64,000 nt of DNA, taken from contig NW_026938254.1 of NCBI RefSeq assembly GCF_032062105.1, positions 558,001 through 622,000 on the forward strand. The letters are read 5' to 3'. This DNA comes from Saccostrea cucullata (Eukaryota). Positions 8,038-62,971 of the stretch are shown here, piece by piece. Below the pieces are notes generated by a model. That model did not search any database and was not told the DNA's origin. It was given only the letters and a program-made list of their open reading frames with translations. Numbering within the stretch: the first letter of the stretch is position 1; the number at the start of each line of letters is the position of its first letter. Position numbers and translations under genes: made by a program.

Positions 8038-8236
8038 AAACCCAGAATGTCTCCAGCCCTCCTTGTGATCAACTTTACCTTGACTTTTAACCCCAGAGTG
8101 TCTCCAGCCCTCCTTGTGATCAACTTTACCTTGACTTTTAACCCCAGAATGTCTCCAGCCCTCCTTGTGATCAACTTTACCTTGACCTTTAACCCCAGAA
8201 TGTCTCCAGCCCACCTTGTGATCAACTTTACCTTGA
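8038..8236 (-). repeat. 51-bp minisatellite x~4 spanning the donor of the candidate PRKD alternative exon
   Basis: Unit aaccccagaatgtctccagccctccttgtgatcaactttaccttgactttt at about 8038, 8089, 8140 and 8191. Confidence 0.95.
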
Positions 8237-8280
8237 TCTATAGCTAAAGGGAGATTATCATGTTTGATACCATGGGACAT
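8215..8280 (-). CDS. PRKD: Candidate alternative first (or cassette) coding exon of PRKD, 66 nt
   Basis: ATG with A at -3 and an upstream in-frame stop. Encodes MSHGIKHDNLPLAIDQGKVDHK, then AAG|gtgggc. Phase 0 fits exon 2, and the VDHK end mirrors VDRK of exon 1. Confidence 0.55.
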
Positions 8281-9369
8281 CTTTATAAAAGATGTTCTCC
8301 ATCAACCAGGAACTTAATTGTTTACGTGGTGCATGTGATGATGATAACAGGCCAAGAATTAATTAAACAAAGAAATATCCTTTTCTAATTATGCAAAAAA
8401 TATTGCTCATGGTGTTAAAAATGCATTAACAATTGGAGTTACTAAGGGAGCATTTTACTAGACATTTCAAGAACTTTTTTTCTCTAGTGAATTTCATTTA
8501 GAACTTGTTACTACTGGATGGCAAAATCTTACCCTCGATCATGGCAGAGAAAACGAGACTCTACAAACATGCAATAAATAACCTGTCAATAGACATTACC
8601 AGGTAATTAAATGTGCAGAAAAAATAATGGCGAGCGAGCTCTAATGACAACCTCTAGGGAAAACAAAATTTGAACTATTGCACATTCATTCAACAGATTT
8701 TTTTTTCTGTAGTAACTTTAGACCAACTAAGCATCACTTGTTCAGCTATTTTCCATCAAGAATTCTACAACAGTTCAACAAAAAATAAACTCAGCTTTAT
8801 TTAATGGATAAATTGCAGAAAAATTGTAAAAAAAATGTTCTTCATTAAAATCAGCATTGTTCACTTTCAGGTTTCGGTTTCGTAATGCAACTTACAGATG
8901 ATGTCCTGAGACTTAAGAGTCTAGAAGCACTAAATATCTTGTGCCGCATGAAGGGACTCGAAATACAGTAAAGCCACACTTGTCATTTTAAAGAAACTCC
9001 TGAGAGAAGAGAAAATTCGGACTTTTGCACATTGATCCAAATGATTTTTTTCTCCGCAGCTATCTGTGGTCCCATAATGCTTAGTGAAATGCATCTTACT
9101 GCAAACTACACTTTCACACACGTTAAAAAGAAATTTCAACAAAAAAATAAACTCACATTGATTTCAAGATTTGACAATAACTTTTATGAGTACTAGATCA
9201 GTTGGGCTACTTTCCATAATTCTTACTAACCCTGGCAATAAAATCAGTAGTCCTGACTAAACTTGCAAATTTACATTTCATAGTCTCCTAATTTAAATGA
9301 AGTAACTTTTAAAACCATACTTGAGGGATTTTTGGTTTTATAATGTGATCATGCAATTTGCCTGAGTGA

Positions 9370-60276: not shown

Positions 60277-60315
<39 letters not shown>

Positions 60316-62971
60316 GAGCAGTTTTCTTTTTAAGTACTTCTGTGTCCTATATTGATTAGACATGCATGGGAGATGTTTCTAGTATGTTTCATTGTACCAA
60401 TCAAGTTTCAGATGCTGCAATTTCAGCAAAGGAATTACCAGGTTAATGTTTTTGGAGCAGGTTAAAATTTTTGGTGCAGTTTTTGGTGTAGGTCTCATTT
60501 TCGAGTAACTATAAGCCTTATGTTGACCAAACTTGCATGGATGGTACATCTTAGGATGCACACTACCAGGCTTGCTTCGGATGCTGAATCTGACCTACAT
60601 TTTTCGCATGAGTGAACAGGTTTAAGTTTTCGGTGCAGGTCTCATTTCCAAGTAACTATGAGACTATAGTGAGCAAACTTGCATGAATGATACATCTAAG
60701 GATGCATACTACCAGACTTGCTTCGGATGCTGAATCTGACCTACATTTTCCGGTTGAGTGAACAGATAAAAGTTTTTGGTGCAGGTTTCATTTCCAAGTT
60801 AATATGAGCCATATAATGACCAAACTTGCATGGATGGTACATCTTAGGATGCACACTACCAGAATTGCTTCGGATGCTGAATCTGACCTACATTTTCTGA
60901 ACGAGTGAACAGGTTGAAGTTTTGGTGCAGGATTCATTTCCAAGTAACTTTGAGCCCTATAATGACCAAACTTGCATGGATGGTACATCTAAGGGTGCAT
61001 TCTACTAGGTTGGCTTTGGATACTGAATCTGACCTACATTTTCTGGATTAGTGAAAAGGTTAGTTTTTTATACAGGTTTCATTTCCAAGTAACTTTGAGC
61101 TCTATGTTGAGCAAACTTGCATGGATGATACATCTTAGGATGCACACAAATGGACTTGCTTCAGATGCTGAATTCGACATACATTTTCCAGATGATGGAC
61201 CTCGTAAAAGTTATGGGTGCAGGTCTATTACCAAAAAACTATAAGGCTTATATAAACCAAACTTGCACAAATGATGCATCAAGGGATGAAAACTCTCAAA
61301 ATTGCTTCAGATGCTGGATTTTAATTACGTTTTCATGATGAAAAACTGGTTTTAAGTTTTTATATAGGTCTATTCCAAAGTATCAAATCAAAATTGCATA
61401 AATTTTGCATTTTTGGATGTACACTTTTTGTTGGTTAATTGTGTGACTTTGCCTTACTTAAAGACAACATTTGTTGAGGTGAGCTCTGTAATCTCTGATT
61501 ACCTATGTTTACTCTCTTTAATAATTTATTGTTTATTTTAGAGCTCTTCATCACCTAGGAAACCTGAAGACCATTGTTAACAATGAGAAGGCAGCTCGCA
61601 GTAGATCTCCATCCCCCCAAAGATTGAGGAGTCGATCTTACTCCCCCACACGCTCCAGGTCCGTGCTCAGCTAGACTGAGGAGTGGATCTTACTCCCCCA
61701 CACGCTCCAGGTCCGCGCTCAGCTAGACTGAGGAGTGGATCTTATTCCCCCACACGCTCCAGGTCCGCGCTCAGCTAGACTGAGGAGTGGATCTTACTCC
61801 CCCACTCACTCCAGGTCCGCGCTCAGCTAGTCAGACTGTTATAGACTTTGTTAATTATGTGATTGAAATGCATGTTAGCTTAGGAGAATGGACACATTAA
61901 ACTTATTTATACTCATTGTTTATCATTCACATTAAAGATAGAATTGATTCTGTATCAATAATTATTATTCAATGGACCTTTGTTGTTGCCTTTTATAAAT
62001 TTAGCTTGTATAATATAGTGACATCATCATGATGGCAATCTACGTACATGGACATCGATATTCAAAAGAAAATTAGAAAAGTACATGTAAACTTGATATG
62101 GTTTCTGATTAGATCTTTTTGTTCTGTTTGGTGTAAAACTTATTATCATTGTTAAGTAATCGTTAAATATTGACTTTTTATTAAGTTGATGAACAACACT
62201 TACCTCCAGGTCTTGTGCCACTGAGATCTTTCAGTTTTGTTGTGTAAAAATAAATGACAATTTTGATATGATTTTGGTTTTTACAACATATGGAAACATG
62301 ATACCTGTATTTGTAAATTTCACTGAAGGGGCACCTGCTTGTTGTGAATTTGTCACTGGGATTTCTTATGGCCTTGGGAAACGTCTGTTTGTTTGGACCA
62401 TAGTAACCAATATTTAATTTCACATTATTTTGTTGTTATTTATTTACCATTAAATAAAATGTCATCCATTTTTAAGGTTATTTTTTATCACTTAGTATAT
62501 TTTTAACTTTATGTGAAGTCTGCATCATATAATAGCACGCATAATAAAATAATAATATATAATAGCATGCCCCTTTCCCTTTGTACTACAGGCATACTTT
62601 AATGATTATTAATTGTTTGAGATCCCCTTCAAAAACTCTTGTAAGGTGAGATGTTTTAACTGGCAGAGATAGAGTGTTCGGAATTTTTACTTATTCATTC
62701 CTCATAGAGAACCACCTTTTGAATTGGAGGGAGGGGAGAACTATCAGAATTTGGAAATAAATAATCTGTTATGATTATGCTGAAAACAGATGATCTGTCC
62801 TTTACAATGGAGAAAAAAATCTGATATTGGCAATAGCTACCCGGGTATATAAAGATGGCGTGTCATAGACATGACACAGGGAATACGTTTCTAACTATAT
62901 ATACAGTATATTAACCCCTCCCCCTTCTTTTCAGATCACGAAACAAGCATCCAACCACTAGGCTAAAATGA
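45348..62971 (+). CDS. C18orf54: Lung adenoma susceptibility protein 2 (LAS2/C18orf54)-like; exons 45348-45492, 45860-46063, [47427-47450 microexon?], 51095-52051, 53976-54081, 54304-54466, 56125-56219, 61542-61658, 62935-62971
   Basis: Phase-consistent GT-AG exon chain. Motifs recalled from LAS2 occur in the right order: FTSASEALEAYLDQY, SVNTDTLI, PSWI/PSWV, LDGDRSWEK..LKPPV, GSLEALKNMLFKLQ, SLEKALHHLGNLK. The last exon is tentative; read-through at 61658 would give a TAG at 61672-61674. Confidence 0.78.
46249..47058 (+). mobile_element. HINE/Helentron-type element with ~145-bp internal tandem repeats
   Basis: Head TATACCCCCGCAAAC GAA GTTTGGGGGGTATA hairpin, (GTCT/GTCC)n, repeats with ATGACCTTGACCCAAGGTCAT, tail GGGGGTAT...TGTCC..GGACA..CTAGTT. 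Confidence 0.85.
47826..47861. mobile_element. 36-bp TIR-only relic with 7-bp TSD
   Basis: ATTTAGC|CAGAGACATATAAAATAATGGTTTTATATGTCTCTG|ATTTAGC. Confidence 0.8.
47951..48576. mobile_element. Degenerate mariner-type MITE in a TA run
   Basis: TA|CAAGGGTTGCCTTAAAAAGTT versus AACTTTATAGACAACCCTTA|TA. Confidence 0.6.
48181..48212. mobile_element. 32-bp TIR-only relic with 7-bp TSD (same TIR family)
   Basis: CTGAGTG|CAGACACATATAAAACCATTTATATGTCTCTG|CTGAGTG. Confidence 0.8.
48794..49549. mobile_element. Complete MITE with ~40-bp TIR
   Basis: TACTGTAAAACGAGAA.ATTTGGCGCA.AC...TTTTAGCGC at both ends; truncated sister copy at 7511. Confidence 0.88.
52086..53395 (+). mobile_element. Full-length (1.31 kb) mariner transposon with a decayed DD34D-type transposase
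   Basis: TA|CGAGGGGCGTTCAATAAATAATGTCATT...AATGACATTATTTATTGAACGCCCCTCG|TA. Relic motifs TGIGT*I (cf. TGDETW, ~52738), FLHDSV (cf. LHDNA, ~53027) and YLPDL*SFDLFLFLNLK (cf. YSPDLAP.DF.LF..LK, ~53114). Confidence 0.9.
54439..55770 (+). repeat. 50-bp minisatellite x~27 spanning a LAS2-like exon donor
   Basis: Unit aaatcctaccaccatagaaaatctacag|gtaagctaacatagagaatggt; the first 28 nt of copy 1 are exonic (NPTTIENLQ). Confidence 0.97.
57289..57790 (+). other. tRNA-derived (Pol III promoter-like) relic split by the hAT MITE
   Basis: A-box TAGCTCAGTTG at ~57297 and B-box GGTTCGAATCC at ~57771, with stem CTGACTTT/AAAGTCAG on either side of the insertion. Confidence 0.5.
57338..57744. mobile_element. 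hAT MITE with 8-bp TSD
   Basis: TAGGGCTGGG...CCCAGCCCTA; TSD GTGTAAAC at 57330-57337 and 57745-57752; subterminal ATCGCAATA repeats. Confidence 0.9.
58609..61510 (+). mobile_element. Outer HINE/Helentron-type element with ~146-bp tandem repeats
   Basis: Head TTTTAACTCACCTCAAC GAA GTTGGGGGAGC; CCAAACTTGCATGGA recurs about every 146 bp from 60527 to 61257; tail GTTGAGGTGAGC..GTAATC.CTGATTAC.CTATGTTT. Confidence 0.85.
58685..60313 (+). mobile_element. Young HINE/Helentron-type element with ~8 copies of a 166-bp satellite-like repeat, nested in the outer HINE
   Basis: Head TTTTAGCTCACCTGAGCCGAAGGCTCAAGTGAGC, (GTCC/GTCT)n, 166-bp period of AATCTTCTTCTCAAGAACCACTGGGCCAG, 3' subTIR CAGGTGAGC, palindrome GGCCCATGGGCC, inserted in a T-run. 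Confidence 0.92.
61621..61830 (+). repeat. 52-bp minisatellite x4 spanning the probable last donor of the LAS2-like gene
   Basis: Unit agactgaggagtggatcttactcccccacacgctccag|gtccgcgctcagct at 61621, 61673, 61725 and 61777. Confidence 0.95.

What the first reader, a model, noticed from the sequence alone, without database searches (positions are those of the whole stretch)
8038..61830. Recurrent splice-junction-anchored minisatellites in three unrelated genes
Seen: five sequence-unrelated arrays each use an exon-intron junction as their unit and extend only into the intron. They are 51 bp x4 (PRKD candidate donor, 8038-8236), 27 bp x~30 (HSD17B4 exon 3 donor), 38 bp x3.7 (HSD17B4 acceptor, 32971-33112), 50 bp x~27 (LAS2-like donor) and 52 bp x4 (LAS2-like probable last donor). 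A sixth possible case is 18 bp x~3 (tacag|ata, ~29453-29500). Almost every high-identity, non-TE minisatellite in the window sits on a splice site, although junctions are a tiny fraction of 64 kb. In the donor arrays the exon-proximal copy is the coding-compatible one, and the other copies are mostly neutralised by stops, frameshifts or loss of GT. Inference: either a mutational process targeted to splice junctions (transcription/spliceosome- or chromatin-boundary-coupled slippage), or tolerated decoy splice-site arrays whose copy number tunes productive versus NMD splicing. Tandem repeats at exon boundaries are not unknown in general, and I cannot verify whether this density has been described for this lineage.
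Basis: partly seen in the sequence, partly recalled or inferred. Interest (0 to 1): 0.82.

Follow-up and report, generated by a model that had tools for sequence, protein, structure and literature searches.

The report
Oyster minisatellites seeded on exon edges
In this oyster genome, short tandem repeat arrays repeatedly start from a piece of DNA that spans an exon-intron boundary and grow into the intron; this is the little-known "mirage" minisatellite of amphioxus, here found to be common in a mollusc, and why exon edges are favoured is still unexplained.

Summary
The window is Saccostrea cucullata (hooded oyster). All the arrays exist at the stated coordinates. Three are anchored on verified splice junctions: 27 bp x31 on the HSD17B4 exon 3 donor, 38 bp x3.7 on an HSD17B4 acceptor, and 50 bp x27 on the exon 6 donor of LOC134249798.

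Three claims do not hold as written:
- The 52-bp array sits on the stop codon and 3'UTR, not on a constitutive donor.
- The 51-bp array lies deep in PRKD intron 1, with no exon evidence.
- The 18-bp case is an acceptor mini-array on a damaged HSD17B4 exon 5.

So two genes are involved, not three. Most pseudo-donors keep GT.

The enrichment is real. In an independent sample of myosin and kinesin exons from the same genome, all 8 well-developed non-TE arrays are junction-anchored. Crassostrea virginica and C. gigas orthologues carry more, two of them at the same HSD17B4 junctions. The arrays are young (single copy in S. echinata), unique to their locus, and differ in copy number between haplotig-like copies.

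This matches the "mirage" minisatellites of amphioxus and the human F7 IVS7 VNTR, so it is a new member of a known kind. Other first-reader notes report the same thing elsewhere in this genome. I had no RNA data, so the regulatory reading is untested.

The parts
27658..28486 (+). 27-bp x ~31 donor-anchored array. Copy 1 is the last 12 nt of HSD17B4 exon 3 plus the authentic donor (exon end 27669). The period is in frame, and the first in-frame stop comes in copy 5.
   Evidence: unique to this locus in the genome
27559..27669 (+). HSD17B4 exon 3; its 3' end seeds the 27-bp array.
29453..29531 (+). 18-bp x2.8 acceptor-type mini-array followed by a truncated, frame-broken remnant of HSD17B4 exon 5. 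Only the ARISDQDW part is left; the NNAG part is missing.
32971..33112 (+). 38-bp x3.7 acceptor-anchored array. The last copy carries the authentic acceptor (33108/33109) of the HSD17B4 linker exon 33109-33205.
54439..55770 (+). 50-bp x ~27 donor-anchored array. Copy 1 is the last 28 nt of LOC134249798 exon 6 (exon end 54466) plus 22 nt of intron. All 27 copies keep GT.
   Evidence: unique to this locus; single copy in S. echinata
61621..61830 (+). 52-bp x4 array that duplicates the end of the LOC134249798 coding sequence, including the stop codon (61672-61674), into the 3'UTR. It is not a constitutive donor.
8037..8236 (.). 51-bp x3.9 array, unique to this locus, deep in PRKD intron 1 (minus-strand gene). 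It has a donor-like motif on the minus strand but no evidence of an exon.

Best explanation
These are 'mirage'-type minisatellites.

Origin. A short segment (18-82 bp) that straddles an exon edge was duplicated in tandem. It was then amplified by replication slippage and unequal exchange, including multi-unit steps. Only growth into the non-coding side survives selection, so the functional copy always sits at the exon-proximal end of the array.

Tolerance. The arrays are tolerated because the splicing machinery pairs the sites nearest the exon body: the first donor or the last acceptor. That is exon definition, or 5'-to-3' scanning as shown for human F7 IVS7. The many intact pseudo-sites therefore stay silent, or give transcripts with premature stops that nonsense-mediated decay would be expected to remove.

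Scale. The arrays are young, lineage-specific and variable in copy number, and they are common in oysters: about 3-5% of sampled junctions and the majority of genic non-TE minisatellites.

What is shown and what is inferred:
- Shown: anatomy, anchoring, youth, uniqueness to the locus, enrichment, recurrence in other oysters.
- Inferred: which sites are actually used (from annotation and homology only).
- Inferred: the excess at exon edges reflects a mutational bias. One possibility is DNA breaks near junctions repaired with small tandem duplications that always include the break; each new copy would recreate the target.
For: Arrays and their anatomy.

Junctions verified.

Independent sample of the same genome (Pfam-matched myosin and kinesin exons with 1.5 kb either side): all 8 arrays with at least 3.8 copies and at least 86% identity are junction-anchored, namely L037 (two arrays), L057, L068/L087, L081, L083, L090 and L086.
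- Four of these lie on the index exon's own junctions, where 0.32 are expected (P = 3.5e-4; P = 4e-3 if the two paralogues count once).
- Pooled with the window, 11 of 17 arrays are anchored against a null of 10-20% (P = 7e-8 to 8e-5).

Other oysters:
- C. virginica has three anchored arrays in HSD17B4 and one in the LOC orthologue.
- C. gigas has two.
- O. edulis has one array starting at intron +6.

Age and variation: S. echinata has single copies of the 50-bp and 52-bp units. L081 and L084 are 98.6% identical but differ in copy number.

Not TE families.

Precedents: amphioxus mirages (PMC3087553, PMC3902484), the F7 IVS7 VNTR with silent functional pseudo-sites (PMC1557585), and small tandem duplications arising at DNA breaks (PMC8355091).
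Against: - No RNA or read data could be obtained. Exclusive use of the exon-proximal site, and the reality of the arrays in raw reads, rest on RefSeq models, protein homology and agreement between assemblies.
- The genome sample is small (about 52 exons from two families, 184 kb), and four weak arrays there were left unclassified.
- Introns are short, so a neutral uniform model already predicts 10-30% junction-straddling seeds.
- Unanchored arrays exist: the window's 51-bp array, L005, L006, several in O. edulis, and C. gigas intron 1.
- The 52-bp array sits on a stop codon, not a constitutive junction. This fits a 'coding edge plus selection filter' better than a strictly splice-site-targeted process.
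- No direct evidence exists for any break or repair mechanism.
Confidence: 0.75

Rival explanations
1. Regulatory decoy arrays. The repeated donors or acceptors bind U1/U2AF, and their copy number tunes the ratio of productive to NMD-targeted transcripts, or enhances or protects the upstream exon. Selection would therefore maintain the arrays.
For: - Most pseudo-donors are intact, and some are stronger than the authentic site.
- Use of any downstream donor in the 50-bp array gives an immediate premature stop.
- RefSeq isoform X2 ends ...SRSALS, which needs a join between two copies of the 52-bp array.
- The same two HSD17B4 junctions carry arrays in S. cucullata and C. virginica.
Against: - The arrays are absent from the congener S. 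echinata and from C. gigas at the same junctions.
- Copy number differs between haplotig-like copies.
- Units are unrelated in sequence and period.
- None of the four RefSeq isoforms uses array donors at exon 6.
- Amphioxus mirages and the F7 pseudo-sites do not disturb splicing.
Confidence: 0.1
2. No targeting. Tandem duplications arise uniformly. Short introns, and selection that removes exon-internal events, make many surviving arrays straddle a junction by chance. The window was picked because it looked striking.
For: - Before expansion the host introns were only about 350-800 bp, so a 27-53 bp seed straddles a junction with probability 7-30% (my estimate).
- The window was selected by a reader.
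- Unanchored arrays exist.
Against: - The independent sample, not chosen for arrays, gives 8 of 8 well-developed arrays anchored, and 4 on index junctions against 0.32 expected.
- About 36 kb of long introns and intergenic DNA in the window holds only one non-TE array, against three in about 4 kb of junction-proximal sequence.
- Two orthologous junctions are hit in two genera (P about 0.007 by my hypergeometric estimate).
Confidence: 0.1
3. Assembly artefact. The arrays are produced or inflated by long-read assembly errors at repetitive sites.
For: - The assembly is fragmented (23,869 contigs) and contains haplotig duplicates.
- HSD17B4 exon 5, next to the 18-bp repeat, is broken in the assembly.
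Against: - Copies have diverged by 2-25% with shared higher-order variants, as in real arrays.
- Two haplotig-like copies both carry the same array.
- Chromosome-level assemblies of C. virginica and C. gigas show the same kind of array.
- The phenomenon has been confirmed experimentally in amphioxus.
Confidence: 0.03

Closest known systems
'Mirage' minisatellites of amphioxus (Adh3, globins BflGb6/BflGb9, troponin C, PGBD5; Canestro et al. 2002, as cited in PMC3087553 and PMC3902484)
   Same: - Tandem repeats whose unit spans an exon-intron boundary.
- They occur at both donor and acceptor sides.
- Splice signals are repeated, yet normal mRNAs are made.
- Copy number differs between haplotypes.
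- Units are unrelated between genes.
- The mechanism is stated to be unclear.
   Different: - The host is a mollusc, not a cephalochordate.
- Copy numbers are much larger here (up to about 30-40, against 3-6 for the globins).
- I give a quantitative estimate of prevalence: about 3-5% of sampled junctions, and most genic non-TE minisatellites.
- The same orthologous junctions carry arrays in two oyster genera.
- Splicing and somatic instability were not tested here.
Human F7 intron 7 37-bp VNTR (PMC1557585)
   Same: The first unit spans the exon-intron boundary. The downstream 5' pseudo-sites are identical to the authentic donor and potentially functional, yet the most upstream site is used.
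   Different: F7 is a single, well-studied locus with few copies. Here the feature is genome-wide, includes acceptor-side arrays, and has no experimental splicing data.
Intron gain or sliding by tandem duplication of an AG|GT-containing segment (Rogers model; PMC3265369, PMC2891723)
   Same: A tandem duplication that includes splice signals creates extra usable splice sites.
   Different: The introns here are pre-existing, at positions shared with other oysters and contiguous in the human protein numbering. No new intron is created; the arrays only lengthen old introns.

Membership tests
Mirage minisatellite | Head-to-tail array with a minisatellite-sized unit (about 10-160 bp) | tested here: met
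   TRF finds periods of 18-52 bp, 2.8-31 copies and 83-100% matches.
Mirage minisatellite | The unit spans an exon-intron boundary, so the splice site is repeated | tested here: met
   Met for the 27-, 38- and 50-bp arrays and for 8 arrays elsewhere in the genome. Not met for the 51-bp array or the 52-bp array, which sits on the stop codon.
Mirage minisatellite | Normal splicing is kept: the authentic site is used and no aberrant mRNA results | tested here: inconclusive
   RefSeq proteins and conserved protein numbering require the exon-proximal site. No RNA reads were available.
Mirage minisatellite | Copy number is unstable or polymorphic between haplotypes | tested here: inconclusive
   L081 and L084 are 98.6% identical with about 5.2 versus 3.7 copies. 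The arrays are absent from S. echinata. The window's own arrays have no second haplotig in the assembly.
F7 IVS7-type silent pseudo-donor VNTR | Downstream pseudo-donors have the same sequence as the authentic donor | tested here: met
   The authentic donor 9-mer recurs unchanged in 16 of the 30 downstream copies of the 27-bp array and in 9 of the 26 downstream copies of the 50-bp array. About 25 of 31 and 27 of 27 copies keep GT. Six copies of the 50-bp array match the donor consensus at 9 of 9 positions, against 8 of 9 for the authentic site.
F7 IVS7-type silent pseudo-donor VNTR | Only the most upstream site is used | not testable with these tools
TE-derived or dispersed satellite | The unit sequence occurs at many places in the genome | tested here: not met
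   The 27-, 50- and 51-bp arrays match only themselves in the 1.17-Gb assembly. The window's 166-bp satellite, in contrast, also occurs in L050 and L065.
Intron gain by tandem duplication (Rogers model) | A new intron arises, bounded by the two duplicate copies | tested here: not met
   The host introns exist without arrays in C. gigas and S. echinata at the same positions.

The most novel reading that the evidence does not exclude
Exon-intron junctions are DNA-level hot spots for small tandem duplication in oysters, and perhaps in other hyper-polymorphic marine invertebrates such as amphioxus. Breaks or template switches tied to the junction are repaired with a duplication that always contains the junction. 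Candidate triggers are edges of co-transcriptional R-loops, polymerase pausing, or the boundary between conserved exon and highly divergent intron during recombinational repair. Each new copy recreates the target, so arrays propagate themselves. This process, not selection, would make junction arrays the dominant class of genic minisatellite: thousands per genome, recurring at the same junctions in different genera. It would also drive intron length, intron sliding and new splice isoforms.
Probability: 0.3. Interest if true: 0.85.

Novelty: new member of a known kind. Interest (0 to 1): 0.6.

Why it matters
Mirage minisatellites were described in amphioxus in 2002 and have stayed a curiosity with no known mechanism. 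If about one junction in 25-30 carries such an array in oysters, then:

- A mutational process that somehow 'sees' exon edges becomes testable, using population long reads and pedigrees of a farmed animal.
- Oyster introns contain thousands of natural experiments in splice-site choice among identical competing sites.
- Gene annotation, short-read mapping and variant calling at exon edges in bivalves will be error-prone in a systematic way. The broken exon 5 and the isoform X2 model seen here are examples.
- These arrays are a plausible source of intron-length change, null alleles and new isoforms.

Tried and rejected
- The look-up of encoding contigs found nothing for the non-longest isoforms P0001, P0002 and P0011. 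This was solved through cluster members.
- Pfam found nothing for short HSD17B4 exons or for LOC134249798. 'LAS2-like' is therefore unsupported.
- The 'PRKD candidate exon' at 8237-8290 (minus strand) is rejected. PRKD exons 1 and 2 are contiguous and phase 0, and the candidate ends in phase 1.
- The kinase Pfam search mostly returned single-exon genes, which were of little use for junction statistics.
A larger sample and the fetch from genomes were not possible.
- The Tegillarca MFE2 representative (P0063) is itself a faulty model around exon 5.
- The original mirage paper (PMC117041) is not held.
- No oyster literature on this was found.
Exons were searched one by one, by reference.
- I also considered in-frame 'back-up donor' selection and rejected it: only 2 of 11 periods are multiples of three.
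- I considered a nuclease that cuts exactly at the splice site, and disfavour it: the exon share of the unit ranges from 0.1 to 0.9.
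Full report
**Identity of the window.** The 370-residue open frame at 51034-52143 finds an 'uncharacterized protein LOC134249798' of Saccostrea cucullata as its best match. That protein (P0001, 608 aa) maps back onto the window exon by exon, at or near 100% identity in every exon. The window is therefore S. cucullata, contig C20391:558001-622000 of a 1.17-Gb assembly in 23,869 contigs.

Genes in the window:
- PRKD on the minus strand. Exon 1 is near 13856-14056 and exon 2 near 3208-3375.
- A small PH-domain gene on the plus strand at 14526-18049.
- HSD17B4/MFE-2 on the plus strand at 25711-39322, with about 26 exons.
- LOC134249798 on the plus strand at 45348-61674.

Exons were searched one by one, by reference.

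**The observation.** The 166-bp one also occurs at other loci of this genome. The 27-, 50- and 51-bp arrays match nothing else in the genome.

**The 27-bp array (27658-28486).**
- Exon 3 aligns to residues 60-94 of human HSD17B4 (PDB 1zbq) and exon 4 to residues 95-114, so the donor after 27669 is the true junction.
- The unit is 13 nt of exon tail plus 14 nt of intron head.
- Copy 1 equals the array consensus. About 25 of 31 copies keep GT, 17 carry the authentic donor 9-mer, and copy 28 is a better donor than the authentic one.
- The period is in frame, and the first in-frame stop comes in copy 5.

**The 38-bp array (32971-33112).** The two upstream exons both end in phase 1. The exon that starts after the last copy's AG continues the frame (...[16 protein letters not shown]...), so 33108/33109 is the authentic acceptor. 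Upstream pseudo-acceptors would run into a stop within five codons.

**The 50-bp array (54439-55770).**
- The RefSeq protein ends exon 6 at the donor in the first copy of the array (exon end 54466) and continues in the next exon at 56125.
- The unit is 28 nt of exon tail plus 22 nt of intron.
- All 27 copies keep GT. Six copies match the donor consensus at 9 of 9 positions, against 8 of 9 for the authentic site.
- Shared variants show multi-unit duplication steps.
- Read-through of the authentic donor hits a stop after two codons.
- S. echinata has this unit once, at the same donor.

**The 52-bp array (61621-61830).**
- The annotated protein reads through the supposed donor and stops at 61672-61674. 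S. echinata and O. edulis end at the same position with ...LS (C. virginica also stops there), and S. echinata has a single copy followed by the same 3'UTR.
- The array therefore duplicates the end of the coding sequence, stop codon included, into the 3'UTR. It is anchored on a coding edge, not on a constitutive splice site.
- One qualification: RefSeq isoform X2 ends ...SRSALS, whereas copy 1 encodes ...SRSVLS and copies 2-4 encode ...SRSALS. X2 therefore needs copy 1 joined to a later copy. That could be a 52-, 104- or 156-nt GT..AG 'intron' using the same motif in two copies, or an allele with fewer copies.

**The 51-bp array (8037-8236).** It lies in the 10.5-kb first intron of PRKD, about 5 kb from either exon. 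Exons 1 and 2 are contiguous in the conserved protein and both phase 0. I count it as unanchored.

**The 18-bp array (29453-29502).**
- Exon 4 ends at residue 114 and exon 6 starts at residue 138 of 1zbq. Exon 5 should therefore encode about 23 residues. Intact oysters read D(I/V)(I/V)VNNAGILRDRSFARISD.DW.
- The window keeps only ...ARISDQDW, out of frame with the acceptor. No NNAG-coding sequence exists on the gene's strand anywhere in the window.
- The genome has only this one HSD17B4 locus.
- The 18-bp units look like acceptor plus exon-head copies. C. virginica has a 35/75-bp array of exactly that kind at the same acceptor.
- So the sixth case is real, but the exon behind it carries a deletion between two similar short motifs plus a one-base shift. 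This is either a null allele or a local assembly error.

**Is it more than chance?** With about 76 junctions in the window, the six non-TE arrays would give 0.29 junction-straddling seeds by chance. Three are seen (P = 0.003), or four if the 18-bp case is counted (P = 2e-4). Because the window was chosen by a reader, I took an independent sample.

**Independent sample.**
- Pfam searches of the whole assembly returned exons of protein kinases, myosins and kinesins, each with 1.5 kb either side: 86 loci, 296 kb.
- The kinase hits are mostly single-exon genes. The myosin and kinesin hits are about 52 internal exons (184 kb).
- TRF found 13 non-TE arrays there. All 8 well-developed ones are junction-anchored:

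| Locus | Period x copies | Junction |
|---|---|---|
| L037 | 53 x 3.8 | donor (42 nt of myosin exon tail plus 11 nt of intron) |
| L037 | 37 x 9.1 | acceptor of the next exon, in the same intron |
| L057 | 47 x 7.9 | donor of a Pfam-verified myosin exon |
| L068/L087 | 53 x at least 18 | donor (46 nt of a kinesin neck exon) |
| L081 | 60 x 5.2 | donor |
| L083 | 40 x 39 | kinesin acceptor (29 nt of exon head) |
| L090 (paralogue of L083) | 40 x 32 | same kinesin acceptor |
| L086 | 61 x about 10 | kinesin acceptor |

- Four of these lie on the index exon's own junctions, where 0.32 are expected (P = 3.5e-4; 4e-3 if the paralogues count once).
- Four weak arrays were left unclassified. Two arrays next to single-exon kinase genes are unanchored, and one is an in-frame coding repeat.
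- Pooled with the window, 11 of 17 arrays are junction-anchored against a null of 10-20% (P = 7e-8 to 8e-5).
- First-reader notes from other windows of this genome describe the same thing in other genes (AGAP, DHRS7, USP32, LETMD1, VPS26C, a cadherin, an AKR). I did not test those loci.

**Other oysters.** In the LOC134249798 orthologue:
- C. virginica has a 43/88-bp array starting 4 nt inside exon 5.
- O. edulis has a 32-bp array starting at intron position +6 of another exon. It also has several plain intronic arrays.
- S. echinata has none.

In HSD17B4:
- C. virginica has an 82-bp x12 array starting 39 nt inside exon 3. This is the same donor as the window's 27-bp array, but with a different unit.
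- C. virginica also has the exon 5 acceptor array and a 25-bp donor array.
- C. gigas has short, array-free introns 3 and 4, but carries an acceptor array and a 71-bp x16 donor array elsewhere in the gene.

Two shared junctions out of about 50, with three arrays per species, has P of about 0.007 (my hypergeometric estimate). This suggests junction-specific propensity or very old arrays with turnover.

**Variation.** L081 and L084 are 98.6% identical copies (haplotigs or very recent duplicates) with about 5.2 versus 3.7 units.

**How it most likely works.**
- Shown: the unit always contains the junction, at any offset (the exon share of the unit ranges from 0.1 to 0.9). The arrays extend only into non-coding DNA, the functional copy is the exon-proximal one, and the arrays are young and unique to their locus.
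- Inferred: a seed duplication followed by slippage or unequal exchange.
- Inferred: tolerance arises because the site nearest the exon body is chosen, as shown experimentally for F7 IVS7 (PMC1557585) and reported for amphioxus mirages.
- Open: why exon edges. A neutral uniform model with short introns explains 10-30% anchoring, not 65-100%.
- A break-and-fill-in origin would explain why the junction is always inside the unit (PMC8355091), but nothing here shows such breaks.
- The stop-codon array and the O. edulis +6 array argue for 'exon or coding edge' rather than the splice signal itself.

[quoted passage not shown] It also matches the human F7 IVS7 VNTR. I found no report for molluscs in the library.

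**Verdict.** This is a real, non-random feature. It is a new member of a known kind, with an unexpectedly high prevalence and an open mechanism.

**Limits.** I had no RNA or read data, the genome sample is small, and exon calls at some neighbouring exons rest on open frames and homology only.

Noticed in passing
window 29320-30105 (remnant 29490-29531): HSD17B4 exon 5 is defective in the assembly. About 13 codons including the catalytic-fold NNAG motif are missing, and the rest is shifted by one base. It is the only HSD17B4 locus in the 1.17-Gb assembly, so this is either a null allele or a local assembly error at a repeat.
   Followed up: partly
window 36656-38329 and 38638-39322: The three-exon SCP2 cassette of HSD17B4 is tandemly duplicated, and the second copy ends with the peroxisomal signal SKL. 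Crassostrea proteins of 856-858 aa have both copies, and isoforms of 721-729 aa have one.
   Followed up: partly
window 61621-61830: RefSeq isoform X2 of LOC134249798 ends SRSALS. This requires joining copy 1 of the 52-bp array to a later copy, which means either splicing inside the array or an allele with fewer copies.
   Followed up: partly
window 47426-47449: A 24-nt micro-exon (DRKRRNRH) of LOC134249798 alternates with another 8-residue micro-exon (AGYWKVDR), or with none, among the RefSeq isoforms. The same pattern is seen in S. echinata.
   Followed up: no
L037:1771-2690: One myosin intron carries a donor-anchored array at its 5' end and an acceptor-anchored array at its 3' end. Together they make up about half of the intron.
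   Followed up: yes
L091:3138-4119 and L091:4451-4759 (C. virginica): The same two HSD17B4 junctions that carry arrays in the window (exon 3 donor, exon 5 acceptor) carry unrelated-period arrays in C. virginica. In C. gigas the two introns are short and array-free.
   Followed up: yes
L061/L062, L076/L077, L081/L084: The assembly contains haplotig-like duplicates (96-99.8% identical), so it is partly unpurged. Such pairs can serve as a built-in source of allelic comparisons.
   Followed up: partly
window 58943-60153; L050, L065: The 166-bp satellite also occurs at other loci (L050, L065). Three further satellite arrays with periods of 145-146 bp lie in the window (46387-46771, 60478-61316, 63377-63936); they found no match among the sampled loci. 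None of the four is on a known junction in the window.
   Followed up: partly
L019 (minus strand) 1174-1394: An in-frame 36-bp x6 coding repeat (ECAKPIQKIEVS) lies inside a large exon upstream of a kinase domain.
   Followed up: no
window 14526-18049: A small PH-domain gene lies on the plus strand, next to the 5' end of the minus-strand PRKD gene and upstream of HSD17B4. The finding does not mention it.
   Followed up: no
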